DNA of 63,861 bases, filler included, from Reticulomyxa filosa (taxonomy: Eukaryota > Protista > Foraminifera), in the NCBI GenBank assembly GCA_000512085.1. It is 18 parts of 18 records of this genome, joined end to end, with 100 filler letters (N's around TTAATTAATTAA, not from the genome) between each part and the next. Parts side by side here need not be neighbours in the genome. Positions count along the whole stretch, not along the records: positions 17,078 to 26,901 come from ASPP01024863.1; 17 more parts are not named here. The stretch is one strand, 5' to 3'. The notes under the pieces are model-generated. The model had not been told where the DNA came from. It worked only from the letters and a program-made list of their open reading frames with translations, and made no database searches. Of the stretch, positions 1,946 to 26,901 are shown in pieces. The first letter of the stretch is position 1. Every line of letters starts with the position of its first letter. A program made the translations under genes and the position numbers.

Positions 1946-4435
1946 TTACCAACTGCTTCTGCCGTACTGTGGTGTTATTTTTTGTTAAGCCACAAAAACA
2001 ATCATGAATGAAACAAACATAATAGTTCAATTTGTCAATTAAACAAATAAGCAGGAGGACATAAATGTCCAAAAGTACAAACCTGAAATTTTAAACGAAT
2101 CAAATATTTCATTCGGATTCTTGCAGTGTCGTAAACAATATATTCATTGTAAAGCAAAGAGCCAGCGAAATTTGTGTCGTTAACACAACTTCCGACAGGA
2201 ACAATGCAACCATCAGGCAGAGTCTTCCATGTGGATTTATTAGGTGAGTTTGCACCGACACCTCGAGTAGAATGCTTTCCAGGAGGCAATTCATTGGCGT
2301 AATAATCAGCATAAAGTTTGTCATTCATTTCTCCCAGAGCGACCTCACACAACAAAATCAATCCTGTGGGATTCGATGGAGAAGTAAAACAATAGTTGGC
2401 AGACTTGCTCGACATGTCTGCAAAATAAACACCTTTTCCAAACATATAACCAGTAACAGGTGCTTCTGGTGGAGCAATGCGTAGCCCTTGAGACAGAATA
2501 CCAACAAAATTGGTCAATCGACTGCCATGCCATAAAAGCATACGATTGTGGTCTGAGCTATGCGCTTTAAATTTGCTCTCTTCGTGTTCGCGCTCCACAG
2601 CATAAATCCGGTCGACTTGTAATTTATAGTTGTCATGTGTAGAAGCATGTGTTAATTGAAGATAATCAGCCAATAATTTGAACATTTCATCGGTTTCGAG
2701 TATCGGTGATAATTTACAACGTAGGGTCAAGTAATGTCTGTCGACAGGATGAACAGTTTCGGTTCGATTTTCAGTTTTCAACAATCGACTAGCAACTTCA
2801 ATTTCACTCAAGCTTTCTACTAATTCCATTTCTTTTTTCACCATTTCCAAGTCTTCAATGGGAGGAGGTACCCGAAATCCAAACGAATGTGGGATCAAAG
2901 TGTAATATCGGTTGCTTAACTCCACAAGGTCTGCCGAATTTTTTTTACTTTTTCGTTTCGTTGTCGTTTTGTCATCAGTGCCTCCCAATGCTTCTTCAAT
3001 CTCTTTTAACACTTGAAAAGCTTGTGTAATAATTGTTTTGTCGACTTTTCCCAAAGGTAGCTTTTCTGCATCATAACCAATTTCTTTCATTTGTGTTTCC
3101 ATCATATTTTTGTCAAATATCAGTGATACCAATTCCTGGACGTGATCGTGCAATGAACTTTTACACGATTTTTTTTTTCTCTTCATCTTCTTTCTCTGCT
3201 GCTTCATCTTTTTCTTCTTCATTTGCTGCGTTACTGGAATAATCCATTGGTAAATATGTGTACTCTCCAGCATGTGCAACAAAATCATCTCGTTCACTCC
3301 AATTGTTTTGCGTTTTCTCATAAAATTTTTTTTCAAATTCCTTCTGACATTTGTCAAGAGGTAGACACTTGAACGTCTTCCCAGCAACATATCCAATCCT
3401 ACCCCATTTGAACCACACATGATATTTTCCTCCGTCATCACTTTCCAATACTTGCAACTTGTAGTATTTATTGTTATTGCGTCCAATGTTCGTTTGGTTT
3501 AGCATTGCGTCCCAAACTACTCCATCCTTTTCCAACACATGACAAGAACTCGCCTGAGGGCACTCTTCGTCCACTGGCGCTTTGCCTTTCATCACAACCT
3601 TTTTTATCGTGCTCTTGCTATCTTTTTCGTCTTTTTTATCTTCCTTTTTATCCTCTTTTTTGTCTTCTTTTTTGTCTTCTTTTTTATCTTCTTTTTTTAC
3701 ATCAGATTTCCAAGCGAGATAATCTCCTTCAATATCCAGCCAATCACCTTTTTCAATGCAATCAAACAGCCACTTTTCTCTTGCAATGGAAACATTTTGG
3801 CTTTTAGCCGTTTCGCATTTGCCTGCGCTCAAATCCAAGTTTTGCGCGATAATCAAATAATCGACGTCTTTTATGTTGCTCTTGATAGTTCCGCCTTGTT
3901 CTTCAATTGCCTCTTTGATCTCAATTTGCGTCCACTCAAAGGTGCCAGCCAGTGCAAACGACTTTCCTTCGAATATTTTCTTTTTTTTTTCCTTTTTGTC
4001 TTCCTTTTCTTTTTTTTTTTCGGCCTTTTCTTTGTCCTCTTTTTCTTGTTCTTCTTCCGTTAATTGAAACGAAAAGCCGCCTTTCAATTTTTCCTGTGTG
4101 TGTGTGTGTGTAGCAAAGAAGGAAAAGGGAAAAGAAAAAGATAAACAAATGTGCGACATATTGTTTTCATGTACAACTTTGTTTTTGCTAAGTCATCATT
4201 TCCAACAATACACACAATAATAATAATAATAAAACCCTCATGACGTGAACGTAACAACAATGAACGCGACAGCAGATTCGAAGGCTTCTTCTTTGGTTCC
4301 AAACGAATTTTTCGAGCTTCTGCCTGTTTTCCCAAGTGTCGACTTGGTGGTTGTGTAGTCATTGCCTTCCAATTTCACACTAAAAAATTCACTGCGAGTG
4401 TTTTTCAACTCCACGACCGCACGGGTTTCCAACAT
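1946..4435 (-). CDS. Poly(ADP-ribose) polymerase: WGR-like, BRCT, (KKED)n linker, WGR, regulatory and catalytic domains; spliced, with one homopolymer frameshift at ~3169-3178
   Basis: PARP signature LLWHGSRLTNFVGILSQGLRIAPPEAPVTGYMFGKGVYFADMSSKSANY and LLYNEYIVY (H-Y-E triad). WGR domain NQTNIGRNNNKYY...KWGRIG. BRCT FEGKSFALAG...VDYLII...EKWLFDCI. ATG at 4435, short last exon YGRSSW*. Confidence 0.95.
3628..3698 (-). repeat. 12-nt tandem repeat encoding (KKED)x5 in the PARP linker
   Basis: Translation reads KKEDKKEDKKEDKKEDKKEDKKDE. Confidence 0.9.
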
Positions 4436-16977: not shown

Positions 16978-17443
16978 NNNNNNNNNNNNNNNNNNNNNNN
17001 NNNNNNNNNNNNNNNNNNNNNTTAATTAATTAANNNNNNNNNNNNNNNNNNNNNNNNNNNNNNNNNNNNNNNNNNNNCAGGTTCCTTCAACGTTCAGATA
17101 TTTATAGGGGCCTTGCCCTACAGGCCATTCATATGTACACTAAATAACGTATTTTTCCTATTACTCTAGTGAATTGTCGTTTGTCTATAAGTTCTAATGA
17201 CAAGTGTGGGCATCTTCTAATTTGCAAATCAAAATGTAATACTAGTGGATTTTTTAAGCGAATTGAAGAAAACATTAATATCAAGTTTACCGTAGTTTTC
17301 TTGGAAACTTGTTGTGCTCCTGGTTGAATGCATAGTTCCTTTTTTATGATTCAGAATAAATAACGAGCCAATTGATTGCAATTTTTTGGTTGTTTTTTGC
17401 TCGTAATCATTCAATTGCAATAATATTTCAAATAGTCCTCTCA

Positions 17444-19100
17444 ATGACGCAAGCAAGATATGCATGTGTAGCTGTTGTGCTTGGAGCAATGTTGTCGTGT
17501 GTGCATTCCATGAGTACACAGTTCCAAGGGCTTATGGCATTTGTAATCGTAGGGATTGTCCCTCACAACGGTAAGTAAGGGAGTGTGCTGTTTGAGTGTA
17601 TTGGCAAGAAGAAAAGAGAATAAGAAGAGGAAAAAAGAGTAAAATGAAAAACAAAAACTGTGTAACAGCATATAGCCATCTCACGACGACATGGTCTCCA
17701 AACCCAACAGAAAGTATAATCCAACAATTGTGTATCAATTTTACGTTAGACTTTATGTCAGTTAATGACTGGTGGGCATCTGATATTGTCAGCGCTGTAG
17801 TCTTATCTTATCAAGACACATTGAAGGTAGTTTTCCTCTGTTCTGCCCCCTCCTCCCTTTAAAAAAAAAAAGTTCAAATCCGACCTAATTGAACATTAAA
17901 AAAAAAAAAAATTGTGGGGGGGGGGGGGGGGGAGTGCAATCGGAAACCGACATATGAACAAAAAGATTGAAGCGAATTATGTTGAAGCAAAAGTAGAAAA
18001 CTTGAACACAAAAACGACAGGGCCTGCCAATAGAACAATCACAAATTATTATGGCGACATAGCGAGTCAGATTGGTTGCCGCAGTGCAAATGAGTGTAAT
18101 AGTCTTGAAGCGCGATTTTCGAATCAAAGCGCATCTTTCGAGGCGAGTTTGGTCATCTATTTACAAGCACAAAATCTGACCCTCTCTTCATTTTATATGC
18201 AAATCGCAAACGTTACCAATGATTCTGACGATGAAAAGCATACTATTATCATCATTGTTTGGTTTTTAGCAGGCAAACTTTAAAAAAAAAAAAATTTTTT
18301 TTTTGAAGAAGGGGGGGGGGGGCGAGGGGGAAATTTCCCCTTTTTTTTTTTTGACGAATCCCTCCCAAAACAAAACTTGTTTTTTTAAAAAATAAAATAA
18401 TAATAAAAAAAAAAAAAAGGTGCGGCAGTGGTGGCGTGCTGCTCTATTGTTGGAATAATTTGCTGGAAAAAAGTGAATGCGTTTCGACGAAGAAAAAGAT
18501 ATGCCGATCCTGATGATGTACCAATGGAGTTTTTATTGGATTCCAATCCCGATGTCGATGAAGAACAGGGCTTCAAACAACGCGGCAAAAACAAAACGAA
18601 TGCGGGTTCACACGGCGACGATATGCAAGCGTCGCTGGCCGATGATGAGGAGATTATGGATCCTGATCCTCAAATGCATCACCAAGAAGGCAATACCCGC
18701 CGCTTCTCGATTTCGACTTCTGGGGATTATCAACACTTCAAAAGTAGAGGCGGGGATCATGACGACGAAAGAAATCGCTACTTGGATGTGGACACGTATT
18801 TAGACAGCAGAGATATTGCACCTATGGAGTCGGCTACTATTCGTATTCCTCACGATAATGACAGCGATGATGGTGAATTCATGTTGAACCAAACTCTGAG
18901 GTATATGTGGCACACGTTGAAGGAGGGAATTAAACATATCATATATGCATCGTATATTACACATATGTACATGCATATATGTTTATATACACATATGTAA
19001 CTTATTCTACATACTCTGCTTTTTTCTTCGTCTTTCAATCTGTTTCAGAGTAATCTTTTTCCATATACGTTATGTGTGGTTTGTTTGCAGTCACAATTAA
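17444..19100 (+). CDS. Hypothetical type I single-pass membrane protein (multi-exon)
   Basis: N-terminal hydrophobic signal-like segment. TM segment IIIIVWFLAG|AAVVACCSIVGIICW followed by KKVNAFRRRKR. Acidic cytoplasmic tail. GT-AG introns. Confidence 0.6.
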
Positions 19101-19456
19101 CTATCCGCTAAATCCCGTCAAACGAAAAATGAGGGCACATTGCAGTAATAATTACATAAACATTTAATTAAATAATAATGTGTTGCTTTGCGAAGAAAGG
19201 TTAAATATTTTTTTGGAAAAGAAATCGCTTGTCAACCTTGGTTGCACATCACTGGTTGATCGGTTTCCTTTACTTATTGACAACTTTCTTAACTTTAAAA
19301 AGAACATCTGACACTTCAACGATTAAAGCTATTTCCAAAACGAAAGCAACCAAAAATATAACCGATGTTTATTATTGCAGAATATCACCAATTTTGTCTG
19401 GAAATTATCAGTTTTGAAACCTTTAAAACGGACAAGTAATAAAAAAAACATTGATC

Positions 19457-22119
19457 ATGATTCGTAAAGTGAGAACACCAGAAGAAAATTTCAAAAATTT
19501 GCCAGATTTTCCGTATGCTGCTCGTTATTTGACGTTGGAAAATGATCTTCGACTGGCCTATATCGACGAGCAGTCAGACAATTTTGGCAGTGAAAGTGTT
19601 ACGTTGGATTGTGTTGAAAAGAAATGTTTTAACCTTGCCTTCGTCTGTAGCATATAAAACCACATTATCAGCCAAGTCAAAAAAGCAAATAAACCAAAAA
19701 TGGTGACACCAACAAATATAAAATGGACCGAAGGTGACATTTCTGTGTTTGCACGGCGTCCCAACGTATTCATACTTGTACCGCAAAATGATTCCAATAT
19801 TTTTGAAAAGCAACAAGCATCATGAAAAAGGAGTGCGCGTAGTGTGCCCTGATTTCATTGGTTGGGGACGAAGTGACAAGCCGGTTGATGTTGCGTTTCA
19901 CAATATCCCCTTTCATCGTGATTCGATCATGTTAATTATCCGACCCTTACTTTTTTTTTTTTAAAAAAGTGCATAGTATTTAAAAGAGAGAAGGGGGAAA
20001 CAAACAAAATGTTTTGTTTGAAAAATATATTGCGTTTTAGAACGTTAATTAAAACATTGGATTTAAAAATATCACTTTAGTTGTTCAAGTTCAGTTGAAA
20101 CTATAAAAAAAAAAAAAATAAATTGTTCCACATTGTTATCAAAATAAGCTAATAAAAATATGATGACAAATTAGGATTGGGGAGGGTTGATTGGCCTCAC
20201 TTTGCCTCTCGAGAAAGATATTCGGTCTCGTGTGAGTCGAGCGATAGTCTTCAACACAGGCATTCCGACAGGCAGATCTCCTGGGGAAGGATTTACGGCT
20301 TGGAAAAACTTTGTAAGTAAAAATTCGAACATGGATGTGGGTGCGTTGATCGAGGGTGCATCCGCAAAGAAATTTTCTTCACAGGAAAAAGATGCCTACA
20401 ATGCACCCTTTCCTGACTTGATGTTCAAGGCCGCTGTGACGGCGTGGCCTTTTATGGTCCCTGTCTCTCCTGACAACAAAGACATGGACTTGTTTCGAAG
20501 GTGTTATTATTTTTGGAATGAAAATAGGATCGCCAATACAAAGAGTATGTTTTCTTTTGTTTTTATCAAACTATATTAATATACATGTGTATATGTGCGT
20601 ATACGTATAAAGCGTATGCATGTACACATAGACGTATATATATATATACATATGTACATCATTGACTTAGTCGTAATTTTCTCTTATACTTTTTCCTTCT
20701 CTCTCTTTCCCCCTATTCTCAAAAAAAAAAAAAAAAAAATGGTTGTGATATTTGAAAAAGAAAAGAACTCAAATCAAAAAGGTGAAAGTATCAAAGGCAT
20801 TGAAGTTTTTATGGCCCATGGAATGCTTGATAAGGTGTTTACCGTCGAATCTGCGAGGTATACGTACGGGACATTAATCGGAGGTAACGATTGCGCGTAT
20901 TTGGCGTGGGTTCCTTTTGCTGGCCATTTTGCCCAAGAGTTTGGGGAGTTTATTGCAGAAAAAGCGCTGAAGCATTTTGGAGACATCCCCAAGGACTTGA
21001 TCGAATACGAATATGTGGCAAAAGCGTCGAGTGATTGGCTCAATCGAAAACGAAAGACCCGCAAAAATGATCAACGCTATGCCGTTAAGTTGACGTTGAA
21101 TAACCCTCCGGCAAATGTTCAAAATCTGGCATTGGTCAAGCAATTGATAGACATTATTCAAAAGTTAGATTCCGATCCGTACACTGGTGGCTTTATCATT
21201 ACCGCTAATTCTGCCAAAGGCATTTTTTCCGCGGGTTACGATATAACCACATTTCTCAAAGTTTGGCAAATTATATGTTTTATGTTCAATTGTCGATGCA
21301 AAAAAAATTTTCTTCCCTCCTTCGGCTCCCCCCCCCCCCCTTTTTGTGCACTTTTATAGAAAGATAAAAAGCTGACAGAACAGTACCTACTCACGATCAC
21401 TAATCTAAAGTTGGTCATTATGGAATCGACCAAACCTTTTATTGCTTGTGTCAACGGGCATGCGTTTGCTGGAGGTGCTGTTTTGGCTTTATTTTGTGAT
21501 TACAGGTTTGTGTGTTGAAAAAAAAGAAGAGAGCTTGAGTACGTTGGACATAGGGAAGAACACATCAGAACATTCCAAAAAAAAAAAAAAAAATCAGGGT
21601 CGGTAAACCGTCGATAAGATTTGCGTTTAATGAAGCGGCCATCGGGATCAAGTTCACGCTCCCTGTGTACAATCTCATTGTACATAACATTGGAAATCAA
21701 AATGCTGCTTATGTTTCCTCCACTGCAAAGGTTTTGTCTGGAACACAGGCAAAAGAATTAGGTTTGTAATATTTCGCTCTTTTTTCCTTTCTATATGCTT
21801 TTTCATACTACATTGTCTTGGTGATGTTTTTACTCTTCTCCGATTTCATTGTTTTGCCAAAAAAGGTTTGCTCGATCGGTGCATAAATACTGATGATAAC
21901 GATGTCTTATTTGATGAGTGTGTCAAAATATTGGAAAATGAATATTTCAATGGCACTGCAGAAGCCATTGCGCACGTCCGGAAACTACGCTACTCTTCTT
22001 TGGCTGAACTCCAGCACAAAAATCATGAAAAGGATTTGATTGATGCTGTTAATTTTTTCCATGACAATACAGTCCAACAAACTTTCCGAGAGTTTTTGCT
22101 CAAAAGAGCTAAGTTCTAA
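19457..22119 (+). CDS. Fusion of a haloalkane dehalogenase (DhlA/HLD-I-like alpha/beta hydrolase) and an enoyl-CoA isomerase-like crotonase with C-terminal AKF. Exons ~19457-19597, 19734-19930, 20041-20088, 20175-20544, ~20782-21260, 21360-21505, 21598-21761, 21866-22119. One-base frameshift in the A-run at 20065-20069.
   Basis: Dehalogenase motifs RTPEENF, FLCLHGVPTYSYLYRKMIP, PDFIGWGRSDKP, ITLVVQ|DWGG, GFTAWK, AYNAPFPD, GMLDKV and AGHFAQEFGEFIAEKALKHF. The same exon continues into LNNPPAN...FSAGYDI, then VNGHAFAGGAVLALFCDYR, FNEAAIG and AKELGLLD. Confidence 0.9.
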
Positions 22120-23367
22120 TTTTTTTTTAATTGTATGTGCAGTGGTTTTTTCAACCAAGTAAGTGACATTTAAACCCTTTTTTAATTACCAAATAAAGAA
22201 CTAAATCATTAAGAAACTCTCCTCACGCGCTTCTTTTTTCATGTACATAACTTTTTTTGAATCTCTTGATTTATTTTGTATGGACACATAACCACTATGA
22301 ATGCAATTGTTTATAATTGGCTGCTTCTGCAATTTGACCTCTTTCTCGTAGATTAATGAAATATATAATTAAGTTGAAAACCAATTGAAAATAAACATAT
22401 GCGCACTACTTTAAATATTATGTGTTGTCATCCAAGTGAACAAAAAATACAATTATAAGCTAATAATGTACAAAGTGCAGAAGAAGACAAAGTAAATCAC
22501 TCACGTTGAGTGGATATAAACATAAACAACTGTAATAACAGTACATTCAACTATTATATGTGATTATACATTTATTTTACAGTTGACAGTGTAATTCTTG
22601 TAAAAATTAAAACTTGAAATTTATTTATTGATAAAAATAACAAAGATGCTTTTGCACTTACAGTTAATTCTAAGAGATTAACATTGACTTCGTCTGCAAC
22701 TACATGACAGATAAAAAAAAAAAAAAATGGAATTACGCCCCCCTTGGTAACTTATTGATTTAATTGATTTTTTGATATAATTTTGATTTGACAAAAATAT
22801 AAACAACACAAATAACTGGTTTAGCTGCAAAAAATTTAATTGAAAAAAAAATTTTCTTTTTGATTGAATAAAACTGGGTCATTTTTTAAAATATGCTTAA
22901 AAAAATGATCCAAAGTTGTCAAAAAAACAGAATATTAATTTTTTTCTTTTATAATTGCGTTTCGAACTGGGTTATTTTTCTTTACTTAAAATTATTTCTC
23001 AAGCAGTGAGAAAAGCAAAAAGCATTCCTTATTGTCTCGGCTTAACATAGTAGAAGAAGAGCTGAACAAGTTGTCACTACCTGATTTTTGGAGTGGAAAA
23101 AATTTGCACAAAAGAGCGTCTAAAAAAATGAAAAAAATATTCTGGAGAGGAATTGATGAAACAGATCCAATCTCACAATGTTAAATGTTCTTGATGTATA
23201 CATTTTAAAGATTAATTTGAATTCATGTTTCTTCTATAGAAATAATTAAATTTTGTCAATTGAACATATAATAAAAAGTTAAAGTAAACTTTTCTTGAAA
23301 AATTTAAATTTTATTATTATTGCATAAGGAAAGTAGAATAAGGCTTTCTTTGTGTGCTTTCTTTAAG

Positions 23368-23532
23368 GAATATGAAAATTAAAAAGCCGATGATACAAAT
23401 GTTGCAAAAAGAATTCATGCTAAAAATGATTTAGAAAATTATACAAATCAAATGAAAACACTTTAAATAATCCTAAATTCAAATAGCAAATAAAAGAAAC
23501 AGATCGTTCAAAAGTTGAAAAAGCAATCAAAG
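23368..23532 (+). pseudogene. Decayed Hsp70 C-terminal (lid) fragment
   Basis: *KADDTNVAKRIHAKNDLENYTNQMK(frameshift)TLNNPKFK*QIKETDRSKVEKAIK resembles the Hsp70 motif KAEDE...IEAKNxLExY. It contains stops and a frameshift. Confidence 0.65.
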
Positions 23533-24577
23533 GTAAATTCGAGAAAGGATTAATTGCACAGAAATTTCAACACGATTATTGTGCTTTGTAGACTCTCCCC
23601 AGTTCTACAAATTTTTTGATAATATGAAGATTAAATTTTCAACAAGTAAAACTTATTTCTGATTGCAAGAAAATGATTAAACAGACATTTCTAGTTTTTG
23701 TAATAACATTTTTTGCATGAAGATAATAACACAATGAAACCATTTGTTAAACAAAAAAAGTATATAACAATTTCAATCAAAAAATATGTTTGTTATACTA
23801 CAATTTTGTCAATTTGTTACAAACAAGACAGCTTCAAAATTTGTAATGAATAGATTCAAATGAGTTGAATTTCTGATAGAGAATGTTGTTTTCAGCTTAT
23901 ACAGCGATTATATAAAAGTTGCTTGGAAAAGAAAAGTTAGTTAAATGATTATTGACAAATTTGCTGAATTTTTGGTTGATCCATATGTATTTGTCGCCTT
24001 AATTTTCTTTTCATACATTGCGACGAGAATTTGGTAAGAAGACAAAAACTTAAAATCTTTTGGAATGATAACGATTATGTTTTTCAAATAATTTATTTTT
24101 CAGTTTTTCATTGCTTCACTAACACAATTTAAGCTGTTTATTTATTGTCCTGGGATCATTATCGATTTTAGTACAAATATCAAGTTATCAAGATATGTAA
24201 AAAATATAATTTTAAAACAATACGAAAATTTTTTGGGTCACGTTCATTTAAGATTAAAAATACAGTACAACCAACAAAAAAAACCAACAATATTTCAATA
24301 ACAACAAATACTGTAACATAATGAATAATTTTTTTTTACACTATTTTCGCTTGTTGAAAAAATTTGACTTAATATTTTGTTATTTTAATGTACAATATAT
24401 CCTCTTGGATAAGGCGTGCTAACTTGGTTTGCAAGTTTAGAGCTAGTTTGCGCATTGAATCTTTAAAAAACAAACGTGACAAACAACATGGGCAAGGAAA
24501 ATAGTGCGATGTTTGTTGCATATATGATAATTATGTCAGTTATTATACTTAAAGCTTTTAAAACAAAAAATGACAAA

Positions 24578-26175
24578 TTACATTAGAGGTTTTTGAAAAG
24601 CATCTTTTCGTAATTGGGTAGTTGCAATGAAAGCAATCAGCAGACAAGAAGTCCAGCAAAGCAAATACAACCAATCATGATGTTCATCACTTATTAAAGT
24701 AGCACTAATAAATGGTGTAACAAGTCCACTAACACTTTGGACAAATTGTAGAAAGCCCGCTGCGGTGGATCTGATCTCGCAAGGATACGTTTCCCCAGAA
24801 TAAGTGAACAAAAGACCCCATACGGGAATAAGAAAAAGGTAAATGAGAGAGCAGCATATAATGATTCCAATGACAGCAGGAAGCCCAGTCAATACAAATT
24901 CAACGAAAAACAGCATGAAGCAGGAGAGGATACAGCCGACATAAAAGAATTTGATTGTCCGTAGGCGCCCCCATTCCACACAGTACTGCGCAATCATGAG
25001 CCCAGGGATCTCGCACAGCACCATCATAAAAATGACGGAATACGTGGAATAAAAATAATGTTTTTCTGAGGAATGCATGTCTGCCAAATACTCTGGCAGA
25101 AACAATGTGAAGCCCCAATATGACATGCCTTGACAAACCCAAAGGATTGACAATAAGACAGTATGGCGGTACGTATCGTCACTTTTATCAAACAACATGT
25201 TTATTTCACACCACTTCGACTGTCGTGGCAATATTGGAAACGAGTCCATATTTTGGGTCATTTTGGCAACAAAGTCCCTATTTCATTTTTTTTTTATTTT
25301 TTTTTCTTCCTCCTTTCTCTTTCTCTCTGCTTTGAGATGATCATATATATACATATATATATATATGTATATAACTGTTTGGAAGGAACAACGGGTAACA
25401 ATACTTGTGAGGGATTTTGCCTTTGTGAGAAATTGAAGCGGATCATTTGAGATATGACTTCATATGCTTGTTCCCATTGTTGTGAACACACTAAATAAGA
25501 TAAAGATTCGAAGCGATGGTAAATGCGAAAGAGTAAACAGAAAAAGCAAGGCACGACGGACCAAAAAGATAACCATCTCCATCTCTCATTGCTACTTTGG
25601 CCACTCCCACTCAAGTACCAACCAACACTTGTTATGTATAACACTCCCATTGTCCCACATAATGTGATCAACAAACAATAAAAACCTCGTTTATGCTTCG
25701 ATCCGGTACATTCCAAAAACAATACGTAATCAATTGTCGACAAACCACCAAGTCCTATTCCTCCAATCACTCCTCGGAAAATTACAAATTCAGTAAATGT
25801 TTGTGCACAGATTGACAGTAATGCTCCCAGTATCACGAGCACCAAACTTCCAATGTAAAACATTTTGCGTCCATATCGATCACTTAATACTCCAAACACA
25901 AGTGACGAACACAAACTACTCAGCGTTGACAAACATGGTAGCCACGAGTACGTTATGTTACTATCAAAGTTGAAATAATCCATTAAATCAGATTGCAAAA
26001 ACACTATCACCAACAGTTCACTGCACACGGCCATGTAGCCAACTGCACACATCCACAACAAATACCATTGATATTTTCCGAAACCTATTGCATTCACTAT
26101 CTCGTCAATCACTAGCAAGTTACTTTGGTTTTTTTTAATGGGATCTCCTATGTCTTCTATTGGTAAACTGTTCAT
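24578..26175 (-). CDS. Major facilitator superfamily transporter (SV2/SVOP-like), one intron ~25276-25377
   Basis: IGFGKYQW, GVLSDRYGRK (MFS motif A), RWRWL...FESLSYL, EIPG, WGRL and ETYPCEIRSTAAG; about 12 hydrophobic segments. Confidence 0.92.
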
Positions 26176-26533
26176 TTTTTATTGTCTGTTGGAGGTTGCC
26201 TGAGCCACCGCTTTCTGAAGAAAGTTTTAATATACAACTCGTTTTTAGAATATGCATGTACATCGAATGAGATTTTTGAACACAGTAAACTCTTCAATTG
26301 CACATCAAGTTGAAACAAAACATTTGATTATATTTTAAATTATTCCTTGTGATCTTCTCATCGATCAGTAGGATCTTGTCCTCGTGCATAATTTGAGATA
26401 ACAAAAATCCACTCAATTTTCTTTCAATTTTTTTGGAGTTAACAAAATATTGTAAAATATGTCGTGTTTGAAGCAGTAAAAGGGACGCGTGTTGTTGCAT
26501 ATAAAAATTTTCTCATCTGTGTAATTTGCAGCA

Positions 26534-26817
26534 ATGGTATTCTTACAAAAGTTTTTTGACAGAAATGTCCAAGCATTCGAATTTACTTTGTACTATATAC
26601 TGATCAACGTCGTAATAATGATATTTGTGATACTTTCTTCGATCCGTCGAGCAACAAAAATAAGCAGTGAAAACAAAAGGAGGGCGAGCGAAAGAGCAGA
26701 AACACCAGGAATGGAAGATCAAAATCCAGAGCCGAATTGTTTCTGGTTGTTTGTGAATCAAATGATAAATCGATGGTTTATCTATACGGCGTTTTTGGTT
26801 CATATTTGGGACACTGG
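26534..26817 (+). CDS. Hypothetical membrane protein, 3'-partial
   Basis: ATG-initiated ORF with two hydrophobic segments, followed by a GT donor and the contig end. Confidence 0.45.
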
Positions 26818-26866
26818 TATTTTGTCTATCCAAGCATGCAGGATCCCTTCCTCTGATTTCCCTCCC

Positions 26867-26901
<35 letters not shown>

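What the first reader, a model, noticed from the sequence alone, without database searches (positions are those of the whole stretch)
19457..22119. Haloalkane dehalogenase fused to an enoyl-CoA isomerase with a PTS1-like tail: candidate peroxisomal dehalogenation/beta-oxidation enzyme
Seen in the sequence: the dehalogenase C-terminus (AGHFAQEFGEFIAEKALKHF) and the crotonase N-terminus (LTLNNPPAN...FSAGYDI) lie in one uninterrupted exon (~20782-21260), so the fusion does not depend on my splicing. Seven GT-AG introns show that it is a resident nuclear gene, and it ends ...KRAKF*. Established knowledge: Xanthobacter DhlA (HLD-I subfamily) uses an Asp nucleophile in QDWGG, Asp in GMKD, His in AGHF and two halide-binding Trp (DW and FTAW). 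All five have counterparts here, although HGEPT reads HGVPT. The crotonase half keeps only the second catalytic Glu (NEAAIG) and lacks the first (AGGAVL rather than GGGCEL), which is the pattern of monofunctional delta3,delta2-enoyl-CoA isomerases. AKF fits the relaxed PTS1 consensus. Inference: this is a bacterially derived dehalogenase domesticated and coupled to peroxisomal fatty-acid oxidation, for example for halogenated or unusual lipids from prey. I know of no described protein with this architecture.
Basis: partly seen in the sequence, partly recalled or inferred. Interest (0 to 1): 0.9.

Follow-up and report, generated by a model that had tools for sequence, protein, structure and literature searches.

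The report
Foraminiferal dehalogenase–enoyl-CoA isomerase fusion gene
A gene of the foraminifer Reticulomyxa filosa joins a haloalkane dehalogenase to a fatty-acid-breakdown enzyme in one protein, and the same undescribed fusion recurs in other foraminifera with a classic peroxisome address tag, which hints that these dehalogenases act on lipids.

Summary
Window 19457-22119 (+) is an eight-exon gene with seven GT-AG introns on R. filosa contig ASPP01024863.1. Exons 1-5 encode a subfamily-I haloalkane dehalogenase (HLD-I) with all five catalytic and halide-binding residues. Exon 5 runs on without a break through a conserved linker into a crotonase domain. That domain's best solved relative is mitochondrial-type delta3,delta2-enoyl-CoA isomerase ECI1, and its single Glu aligns with ECI1 Glu136.

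GenBank annotates only the 3' part (RFI_28781, 403 aa). The dehalogenase N-terminal portion (exons 1-4) is unannotated.

The fusion is a family. Bolivina argentea has a 636-aa transcript product and a second paralogue. At least four environmental eukaryotic contigs carry the same architecture and a nearly invariant linker, KALKYFGDIPxDxVEYEW. Three relatives end in -SKL. R. filosa ends in -AKF at the same position, so peroxisomal targeting is well supported for the family and only plausible here.

The assembly is one base short in an A5 run (20065-20069). No reads were available, so an assembly error cannot be told from a recent pseudogene.

A bacterial origin is unresolved. Chemical coupling of the two halves is inference. 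No paper describing the architecture was found. Verdict: a new variant of known kinds, of moderate to high interest.

The parts
19457..19597 (+). Exon 1: start codon and HLD N-terminus (MIRKVRTPEENFKNLPDFPY...). There is no N-terminal extension or presequence relative to homologues.
   Evidence: tblastn of P0016, P0017 and P0004; alignment A1; donor GT
19734..19930 (+). Exon 2: HLD core with the HGVPT oxyanion-hole motif and PDFIGWGRSDKP.
   Evidence: Pfam Abhydrolase_1, 3e-07; 52-60% identity to foram homologues
20041..20088 (+). Exon 3 (48 nt): TLIKTLDLK / NITLVVQ, read in two frames.
   Evidence: With one extra A the stretch aligns without gaps to FHRESICELIKSLNLTNITLVVQDWGG of P0017.
20065..20069 (+). 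A5 run where the assembly is one base short (frameshift). T_TTA_AAA at 20062-20068 is also a -1 slippery-type heptamer.
   Evidence: Exons total 1799 nt = 3n-1. Frame B has a stop upstream at 20050-20052, and no alternative AG acceptor exists.
20175..20544 (+). Exon 4: nucleophile Asp-Trp (20175-20180), the cap domain and the second halide-binding Trp (20301-20303).
   Evidence: PDB phmmer: DppA 2xt0 1.4e-25, positions 123-235. NCBIfam NF002043 haloalkane dehalogenase, 1.5e-27.
20782..21260 (+). Exon 5, the junction exon. It holds the catalytic acid Asp (20829-20831), the catalytic His (20925-20927), the conserved linker KALKHFGDIPKDLIEYEY (20961-21014) and the crotonase N-terminus up to FSAGYDITTFLK.
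   Evidence: Uninterrupted translation. Matches DhlA 251-308 and ECI1 18-70. Linker columns are nearly invariant in A3.
21360..21505 (+). Exon 6: crotonase core, ...PFIACVNGHAFAGGAVLALFCDY. There is no Glu at the position of the first hydratase Glu.
   Evidence: Pfam ECH_1, 4.9e-09; alignment A2; profile alignment to 1sg4
21598..21761 (+). Exon 7: holds the single catalytic Glu (21632-21634, in FAFNEAAIG). The acceptor chosen here removes the 13-aa insert of the GenBank model.
   Evidence: The family Glu aligns with Glu136 of human ECI1. The insert THQNIPKKKKKIR of P0001 is absent from all relatives.
21866..22119 (+). Exon 8: C-terminal helices, the tail ...FLLKRAKF (AKF at 22108-22116) and the stop (22117-22119).
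   Evidence: ORF list. Aligns end to end with relatives that end in -SKL.

Best explanation
This is a genuine Reticulomyxa filosa nuclear gene for a two-domain protein of about 599 residues.

The N-terminal roughly 330 residues are a subfamily-I haloalkane dehalogenase. By the known HLD mechanism, the Asp nucleophile attacks the halogen-bearing carbon while two Trp hold the leaving halide. His and Asp then hydrolyse the alkyl-enzyme ester.

A conserved linker of about 20 residues leads into an ECI1-type delta3,delta2-enoyl-CoA isomerase. This is a crotonase fold in which a single Glu shuttles the proton that moves a 3-enoyl double bond to the 2-position.

The protein belongs to a foraminiferal family whose members carry a C-terminal PTS1. 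The family is therefore most likely imported by Pex5 into peroxisomes, where fatty-acid beta-oxidation takes place.

The fusion places a dehalogenase upstream of a resident peroxisomal enzyme whose C-terminal signal serves both domains, and it ties their expression together. The likely common theme is breakdown of unusual lipids (halogenated and/or unsaturated).

The single missing A in exon 3 is most likely a homopolymer error of the draft assembly.

Shown: the gene structure, the domain identities, the catalytic residues, family conservation and the SKL tails in relatives.

Inferred: enzymatic activities, peroxisomal location in R. filosa, any substrate link between the domains, and that the frameshift is an error.
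For: - Gene model with seven GT-AG introns; the exons are otherwise free of stops.
- HLD-I identity by sequence: DppA 1e-25 for one exon alone, DhlA C-terminus match, NF002043.
- HLD-I identity by fold: the AF2 model of the Bolivina homologue has pLDDT 70-95 over residues 1-350. Its 17 best Foldseek hits are all HLD-I structures (TMt 0.83-0.89), clearly ahead of HLD-II/III.
- All five HLD-I residues are present.
- The crotonase-half family profile hits human and rat ECI1 best (108 and 105 bits; the next hit scores 91). The family Glu lies on ECI1 Glu136 and no hydratase Glu is present.
- Fusion relatives span the junction: P0016 (636 aa, Bolivina argentea, PF00561 + PF00378), P0003, P0004, P0010, P0002, and loci L003, L004, L005 and L007.
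- The linker is nearly invariant.
- P0008, P0012 and P0135 end in -SKL at the position of R. filosa -AKF.
- Foraminifera express Pex5 and predicted peroxisomal beta-oxidation enzymes (bioRxiv 10.1101/2022.07.20.500910).
- The N-terminus matches homologues with no presequence.
Against: - The reading frame is broken in the only available sequence, and no reads could be consulted.
- AKF is not a canonical PTS1 tripeptide, because Phe at the last position is rare.
- R. filosa has Tyr where the linker Trp is otherwise nearly invariant.
- Some relatives have lost the nucleophile (P0003: CQGFGG) or most of the HLD domain (P0012/L002). The dehalogenase half is therefore dispensable in some lineages.
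- The relatives score below NCBIfam's curated cut-off for NF002043 (210 against 265 bits).
- There is no experimental or expression evidence for R. filosa.
- The AF2 model of the isomerase half was unusable (pLDDT 54).
Confidence: 0.65

Rival explanations
1. The R. filosa copy is a recently inactivated pseudogene. The 1-nt deletion in exon 3 is real and truncates the protein before the nucleophile. The family is functional elsewhere, but this locus is decaying.
For: - Frameshift in the assembly, with a stop 4 codons downstream in the original frame.
- Non-canonical AKF where relatives have SKL.
- Tyr in place of the linker Trp.
- The GenBank annotators could only call the 3' part.
- Relatives show that HLD decay does occur in this family (P0003, P0012).
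Against: - This is the only lesion in 1799 coding nt spread over 8 exons.
- All 14 splice dinucleotides are intact.
- All catalytic residues of both domains, and 10 of the 11 nearly invariant junction columns plus both invariant ones, are retained.
- The lesion lies in a homopolymer, the classic site of draft-assembly errors.
- The exons hold 17 A/T runs of 5 or more.
Confidence: 0.2
2. The dehalogenase-like half no longer removes halogen. It serves as a different hydrolase, or as a non-catalytic lipid or acyl-chain-binding module for the isomerase, as the ACBP domain does in mammalian ECI2.
For: - Natural substrates of most HLDs are unknown (established knowledge).
- P0003 has lost Asp-Trp, and P0012 keeps only the last ~40 HLD residues plus the linker, yet both retain the isomerase Glu. 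P0012 also retains SKL.
- HGVPT replaces HGEPT or HGQPT in all foram copies.
Against: - In R. filosa, P0016, P0004, P0017, P0018 and P0010 the Asp nucleophile is conserved; the acid Asp, the His and both halide-binding Trp are conserved wherever each sequence covers them (P0010 lacks the His region). P0135 lacks the N-terminal part but keeps the acid Asp, the His and the second Trp.
- The Trp-Trp pair is specific to halide stabilisation in HLD-I.
- The residue that changed (Glu/Gln to Val) contributes a backbone NH, not its side chain.
Confidence: 0.1
3. The frame change is read through in vivo by a programmed -1 ribosomal frameshift, or by transcriptional slippage, on T_TTA_AAA (20062-20068).
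For: - The heptamer has the X_XXY_YYZ form in the incoming frame.
- A -1 slip gives exactly ...DLK-NITLVVQ..., which aligns without gaps to homologues.
Against: - No homologue needs a shift here. P0016, P0017, P0018, P0004 and P0010 read straight through.
- Programmed -1 frameshifting is rare in cellular eukaryotic genes and needs a downstream stimulator. That was not examined, because it would lie across a splice junction.
- An A5 run is short for transcriptional slippage.
Confidence: 0.03
4. The fusion is an artefact: a chimeric contig, or two adjacent genes wrongly merged.
For: The assembly is a fragmented draft, and GenBank annotates only one half.
Against: - Both domains meet inside one uninterrupted exon.
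- A Bolivina transcript product (P0016) and several independent contigs have the same junction and linker.
Confidence: 0.02

Closest known systems
HLD-I haloalkane dehalogenases: DppA (Plesiocystis pacifica, PDB 2xt0), DhlA (Xanthobacter autotrophicus, 1edb/2had), DpaA (7avr)
   Same: - Same fold and cap.
- Asp-His-Asp triad, with the acid placed after strand 7.
- Trp-Trp halide site.
- About 34-40% identity.
   Different: - Eukaryotic and interrupted by introns.
- HGVPT instead of HGEPT.
- A C-terminal conserved extension that continues into a second enzyme.
- The relatives score below the NCBIfam curated cut-off.
- Activity is untested.
Mitochondrial delta3,delta2-enoyl-CoA isomerase ECI1/DCI (human 1sg4, rat 1xx4)
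   Same: - Best solved relative of the crotonase half.
- The single catalytic Glu aligns with Glu136.
- No hydratase Glu.
- The DYR...NE spacing is identical.
   Different: - About 30% identity, and only about 17 bits ahead of other crotonases.
- No mitochondrial presequence is possible, because the domain is internal.
- Carries a PTS1-type tail instead.
Peroxisomal ECI2/PECI of mammals (ACBP domain + isomerase + -SKL); comparison from established knowledge, not tested here
   Same: - Same logic of architecture: an N-terminal accessory domain, a C-terminal enoyl-CoA isomerase and a PTS1 at the very end.
   Different: - The accessory domain there is an acyl-CoA-binding protein, not an alpha/beta-hydrolase.
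- Its isomerase belongs to the other (yeast Eci1-like) branch.
Soluble epoxide hydrolase EPHX2 (established knowledge)
   Same: - An alpha/beta-hydrolase with an Asp nucleophile, evolutionarily close to HLDs.
- Fused to a second enzyme domain.
- Carries a weak PTS1 and acts on modified fatty acids.
   Different: - Uses two Tyr, not two Trp, so its chemistry is epoxide opening.
- Its partner domain is a phosphatase.
Ascomycete HLD-I proteins (Xylogone sp. P0020, Hortaea werneckii cluster P0101)
   Same: - Eukaryotic HLD-I.
- A ~25-aa C-terminal extension that aligns with the foram linker.
- Several end in PTS1-like tripeptides: SKL, AKM, TKL.
   Different: - Single-domain, with no crotonase.
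- A sister relationship to the foram clade is unresolved (51/51).

Membership tests
Haloalkane dehalogenase subfamily I (HLD-I) | Alpha/beta-hydrolase core with a helical cap, closest to HLD-I structures | tested here: met
   Exon 4 alone matches DppA at 1.4e-25. The model of homologue P0016 has all 17 top Foldseek hits in HLD-I, with TMt 0.83-0.89. R. filosa itself was judged exon by exon only.
Haloalkane dehalogenase subfamily I (HLD-I) | Nucleophile Asp followed by halide-binding Trp (QDWGG) | tested here: met
   20175-20180 aligns with DppA D123/W124. The preceding Q lies at the end of exon 3.
Haloalkane dehalogenase subfamily I (HLD-I) | Catalytic His, and a catalytic acid Asp after strand 7 (the HLD-I position) | tested here: met
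   H at 20925-20927 aligns with DhlA H289. D at 20829-20831 aligns with DhlA D260.
Haloalkane dehalogenase subfamily I (HLD-I) | Second halide-stabilising residue is a cap-domain Trp (an Asn in HLD-II/III) | tested here: met
   GFTAW: the Trp at 20301-20303 aligns with DppA W163.
Haloalkane dehalogenase subfamily I (HLD-I) | Score above the curated family cut-off (NCBIfam NF002043, 265 bits) | tested here: not met
   Relatives P0016 and P0017 score 210 and 216 bits. It is the top family for both, but below the cut-off. The whole R. filosa protein was not scored, because the exons were not joined.
Haloalkane dehalogenase subfamily I (HLD-I) | Intact open reading frame | tested here: not met
   The assembly is one base short in the A5 run at 20065-20069. 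No reads were available to decide.
Haloalkane dehalogenase subfamily I (HLD-I) | Hydrolytic halide release from haloalkanes | not testable with these tools
   Needs an enzyme assay.
ECI1-type delta3,delta2-enoyl-CoA isomerase (crotonase superfamily) | Crotonase (ECH_1) domain | tested here: met
   Pfam ECH_1 in exons 5 and 6. P0001, P0016 and P0135 match ECH_1 at up to 1.8e-23.
ECI1-type delta3,delta2-enoyl-CoA isomerase (crotonase superfamily) | A single catalytic Glu equivalent to human ECI1 Glu136, and no Glu at the first hydratase position | tested here: met
   NEAAIG (Glu at 21632-21634). The family Glu aligns with E136 of 1sg4. AGGAVLALFCD has Leu at the hydratase-Glu position.
ECI1-type delta3,delta2-enoyl-CoA isomerase (crotonase superfamily) | Closer to ECI1 than to other crotonase subfamilies | tested here: inconclusive
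   ECI1 is the top hit with the family profile (108 and 105 bits, against 91 for the next) and with single sequences. No subfamily phylogeny was made, and the AF2 model was unusable.
ECI1-type delta3,delta2-enoyl-CoA isomerase (crotonase superfamily) | 3-enoyl-CoA to 2-enoyl-CoA isomerase activity | not testable with these tools
   Needs an enzyme assay.
PTS1-targeted peroxisomal matrix proteins | C-terminal tripeptide of the form [SAC]-[KRH]-[LM] | tested here: not met
   R. filosa ends in -AKF (22108-22116). Relatives P0008, P0012 and P0135 end in -SKL at the aligned position, so the feature is met for the family but not strictly for this gene.
PTS1-targeted peroxisomal matrix proteins | Pex5-dependent import into peroxisomes | not testable with these tools
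   Needs a localisation experiment. Foram Pex5 transcripts are reported in 10.1101/2022.07.20.500910.

The most novel reading that the evidence does not exclude
Foraminifera possess a dedicated peroxisomal bifunctional enzyme in which an HLD-I dehalogenase and an enoyl-CoA isomerase act on the same class of molecules: halogenated, unsaturated fatty acyl chains. Such chains could arise from haloperoxidase or HOX chemistry, or from algal and bacterial prey. This would be the first physiological pathway context for a haloalkane dehalogenase. Together with the ascomycete HLD-I proteins that carry PTS1-like tails, it would define a eukaryotic, peroxisomal branch of the family.
Probability: 0.2. Interest if true: 0.8.

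Novelty: new variant of a known kind. Interest (0 to 1): 0.6.

Why it matters
Haloalkane dehalogenases are heavily used in biotechnology (HaloTag, bioremediation, biocatalysis). Their natural substrates and cellular roles are nevertheless largely unknown, and they are treated as single-domain, mostly bacterial enzymes.

A conserved eukaryotic fusion to a beta-oxidation auxiliary enzyme, with a peroxisomal signal, gives a concrete and testable hypothesis about physiological context: lipid-derived halogenated substrates handled in peroxisomes. It also provides a new set of eukaryotic HLD-I sequences to characterise.

The finding adds to the picture of unusual peroxisomal metabolism in foraminifera. 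It also corrects the R. filosa annotation: RFI_28781 lacks its N-terminal ~290 residues and probably contains a spurious 13-residue insert.

Tried and rejected
- **Reads.** The look-up of sequencing runs listed no run for 19400-22200. Read laying was therefore not used, and neither the frameshift nor the junction could be checked in reads.
- **Word-index search.** The search for homologous proteins with the junction exon found nothing, a limit of query length and word matching. The exhaustive representative search found the family instead.
- **AF2 of the R. filosa isomerase half.** The MSA had 10 rows. pLDDT was 54 and pTM 0.44, so the model was discarded and not used for fold search.
- **AF2 of full-length P0016.** Only residues 1-410 are usable. 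The crotonase half scores below 50, so nothing can be said about domain packing.
- **JGI metagenome scan.** The junction alignment gave 160 pattern matches, none confirmed.
- **Protein Atlas.** The crotonase half returned only generic ECH clusters.
- **Eukaryotic monophyly of HLD-I.** Foram + ascomycete scored 96 under LG+G4 but dropped to 51/51 under the mixture model with a careful search. It is rejected as a claim. The AU test did not finish.
- **Literature.** Searches on HLD with foraminifera, enoyl-CoA fusion, peroxisomal or Eukaryota, on the AKF PTS1, and on the accession prefix JAANSW found nothing relevant.
- **Joined exons.** The spliced protein was never assembled or submitted, so the whole R. 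filosa protein has no whole-protein scores.
- **Alternative splicing to avoid the frameshift.** Rejected. Frame B has TAA at 20050-20052, and no AG acceptor lies downstream of it within exon 3.
Full report
**What the sequence is.** The piece 17078-26901 is the whole 9824-bp contig ASPP01024863.1 of the Reticulomyxa filosa draft genome GCA_000512085.1. On the + strand between 19457 and 22119 I reconstructed eight exons: 19457-19597, 19734-19930, 20041-20088, 20175-20544, 20782-21260, 21360-21505, 21598-21761 and 21866-22119. All seven introns begin with GT and end with AG and are 86-237 nt long. Exons have 41.8% GC and introns 29.7%. tblastn with three homologous proteins picks up exons 1, 2, 4, 5, 6 and 8 in the expected order. 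No whole-protein score exists for R. filosa itself.

**The dehalogenase half.**
- Exon 2 hits Pfam Abhydrolase_1.
- Exon 4 alone matches the HLD-I enzyme DppA (PDB 2xt0) at 1.4e-25, followed by DccA, DmrA, DpcA, DpaA and DhlA. It also matches NCBIfam NF002043 'haloalkane dehalogenase' at 1.5e-27.
- The printed alignments place Asp-Trp (20175-20180) on DppA D123/W124, and the cap Trp of GFTAW (20301-20303) on W163.
- They place Asp of HGMLDK (20829-20831) on DhlA D260, and His of AGHF (20925-20927) on DhlA H289.
- This gives the HLD-I-specific combination: the acid after strand 7 and a Trp-Trp halide site.
- An AlphaFold model of the full-length Bolivina homologue P0016 is confident over the dehalogenase half (pLDDT 70-95). 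Its 17 best Foldseek hits are all HLD-I structures (TMt 0.83-0.89, E 1e-25 to 1e-22), followed by a clear step down to HLD-II/III.
- HGVPT replaces the bacterial HGEPT or HGQPT in all foram copies. From established knowledge, that residue contributes a backbone NH to the oxyanion hole.

**The junction.** Exon 5 translates without interruption. It contains the last ~65 residues of the dehalogenase, a linker and the first ~60 residues of a crotonase domain. The same 159-residue translation matches DhlA 251-308 and human/rat mitochondrial enoyl-CoA isomerase 18-70, plus Pfam ECH_1. The fusion therefore does not depend on any splice prediction.

**The crotonase half.**
- Exon 6 hits ECH_1.
- A profile of the family's C-terminal halves (A2) finds human ECI1 (1sg4, 108 bits) and rat ECI1 (1xx4, 105 bits) as the best solved relatives. 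The next crotonase scores 91 bits. Single sequences give the same first hit.
- The conserved Glu (R. filosa NEAAIG, 21632-21634) aligns with Glu136 of 1sg4. From established knowledge, this is the catalytic base of that isomerase.
- The position of the first hydratase Glu is Leu (AGGAVLALFCD).
- The spacing between DYR and the Glu is 11 residues in every relative and in my model. The GenBank protein RFI_28781 (P0001) has 13 extra residues (THQNIPKKKKKIR) from an upstream acceptor, which no relative shares. I therefore prefer the intron 21506-21597.

**Annotation gap.** GenBank calls only 20652-22119 (403 aa, 'hypothetical protein RFI_28781'). Its first 44 residues are translated intron. Exons 1-4 are unannotated, probably because of the frameshift.

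**The frameshift.** The exons total 1799 nt (3n-1). Exon 3 reads TLIKTLDLK in the frame entering from exon 2 and NITLVVQ in the frame leaving to exon 4. The two overlap by one A of the run at 20065-20069. With one more A the stretch aligns without gaps to FHRESICELIKSLNLTNITLVVQDWGG of the homologues.

Alternative splicing cannot rescue the frame. The outgoing frame has TAA at 20050-20052, and no AG lies downstream of it. This is the only lesion in the gene.
- An error of the draft assembly at a homopolymer is the simplest reading. From memory, the R. filosa assembly included 454 data. I could not check this, because the genome paper is not in the library.
- A very recent pseudogene cannot be excluded, since no sequencing run was listed.
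- The site is also a -1 slippery-type heptamer (T_TTA_AAA), and a -1 slip would give the same protein. No homologue needs a shift there, so I rate this low.

**It is a family, not a one-off.** An exhaustive phmmer search of 1.84 billion representatives with the junction exon returned 15 hits. Several of them span the junction:
- P0003 (Bolivina argentea, EukProt)
- P0004
- P0002
- P0010
- P0008
- P0012

A follow-up search found P0016, a 636-aa Bolivina argentea transcript product carrying PF00561 + PF00378. It also found P0135.

tblastn shows that L003, L004 and L005 encode the complete two-domain protein, interrupted by introns that prokaryote-style gene calling had split. The called genes of L007 show the same pattern. 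L002 (P0012) keeps only the last ~40 dehalogenase residues, the linker and the isomerase. P0003 has lost the nucleophile (CQGFGG).

The linker KALKYFGDIPxDxVEYEW is nearly invariant across ten sequences. That is unusual for a passive tether. In the P0016 model it is ordered (pLDDT about 85) and forms a strand.

No fusion with a prokaryote-like sequence appeared in the search. A JGI metagenome scan added nothing.

**Targeting.** P0008, P0012 and P0135 end in -SKL. R. filosa ends in -AKF at the aligned last three positions, preceded by basic residues. The end of P0016 is masked by a poly-K run, probably an A-rich tract or tail. The N-terminus matches the homologues with no presequence.

A foram transcriptome study reports Pex5, Pex7 and predicted peroxisomal beta-oxidation enzymes (10.1101/2022.07.20.500910). 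It does not mention a dehalogenase. Peroxisomal import is thus well supported for the family. It is plausible but unproven for R. filosa: Ala at -3 is canonical, while Phe at -1 is a rare variant (from established knowledge, yeast catalase A uses -SKF).

**Origin.** In trees of HLD-I domains the foram sequences, including the R. filosa exon-4 fragment, form one clade (99; 100/99). This is consistent with a single fusion event.

Six proteins form a second clade (100/97). Two are identified as ascomycete: Xylogone sp. and Hortaea werneckii. They carry a ~25-residue C-terminal extension that aligns with the foram linker and ends in TKL, VNL, ASL, ASS, AKM or SKL.

Foram + fungal as one group had 96 under LG+G4 but only 51/51 under the mixture model. 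Neither a common eukaryotic origin nor a bacterial donor is shown.

**Mechanism and its limits.** The domain chemistries follow from the conserved residues and the known mechanisms of DhlA-type HLDs and ECI1. What links them is inference.

The minimal reading is co-targeting and co-expression. A PTS1 must be C-terminal, so placing the dehalogenase upstream of a resident peroxisomal enzyme imports both.

The stronger reading is that both domains act on halogenated unsaturated acyl chains. It is attractive, but nothing here tests it. Loss of the dehalogenase nucleophile or domain in some paralogues shows that the isomerase half can stand alone.

**Novelty.** Seven literature searches found no description of this architecture or of peroxisomal HLDs. 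Both domains belong to well-known families. The fusion, its conserved linker, its foraminiferal distribution and its PTS1 are new. I class it as a new variant of a known kind, with interest 0.6.

Noticed in passing
P0020, P0021, P0022, P0025, P0101, P0128 (proteins; no window coordinates): A clade of ascomycete HLD-I proteins (Xylogone sp.; Hortaea werneckii cluster) carries a ~25-aa C-terminal extension that bacterial HLD-I lack. The extension ends in SKL, AKM, TKL, ASL, VNL or ASS, several of which are PTS1-like. It aligns with the foram linker. Fungal haloalkane dehalogenases may therefore be peroxisomal too.
   Followed up: partly
window 21506-21597 versus GenBank model RFI_28781: The annotated protein uses an upstream acceptor that inserts THQNIPKKKKKIR just before the catalytic Glu. 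No relative has this insert. The first 44 residues of the annotated protein are translated intron (20652-20781).
   Followed up: yes
L002:10001-11251 (P0012, TARA scaffold_4528): This relative keeps the linker, the isomerase domain and -SKL. Its N-terminal ~100 residues show no detectable similarity to HLD, apart from a faint NVTLVILGSN remnant. It is an example of decay of the dehalogenase half.
   Followed up: partly
L004:1185-1289 and L007 (TARA scaffolds); L005:~3636-3705: Intron positions differ between lineages. L004 has an intron inside GHFLQ|E that R. filosa lacks, and P0018 of L007 runs into non-coding sequence at the same point. L005 has an intron one codon away, in a different phase, from the R. 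filosa exon 5/6 boundary (after ...F[AL][QK]).
   Followed up: partly
window 24578-26175 (-): An MFS/sugar-transporter gene is split by an intron into two ORFs (25294-26175 and 24578-25261). GenBank annotates only the N-terminal ORF (293 aa). The C-terminal half (Pfam MFS_1, 4e-11) is unannotated.
   Followed up: partly
window 17644-19000 (+): An annotated 374-aa gene has no Pfam hit. The ORF 18428-19000 is acidic and low in complexity.
   Followed up: no
P0005 (1132 aa) and P0006 (1231 aa): Two long proteins match the crotonase N-terminal segment 9-10 times each. They appear to be tandem arrays of crotonase domains of unknown origin.
   Followed up: no
window 20560-20740 and 21320-21345, 21575-21595: The introns carry long homopolymer tracts (A19, C12, A16) and TA/CA-rich simple repeats. 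This composition makes homopolymer length errors likely in this assembly.
   Followed up: no
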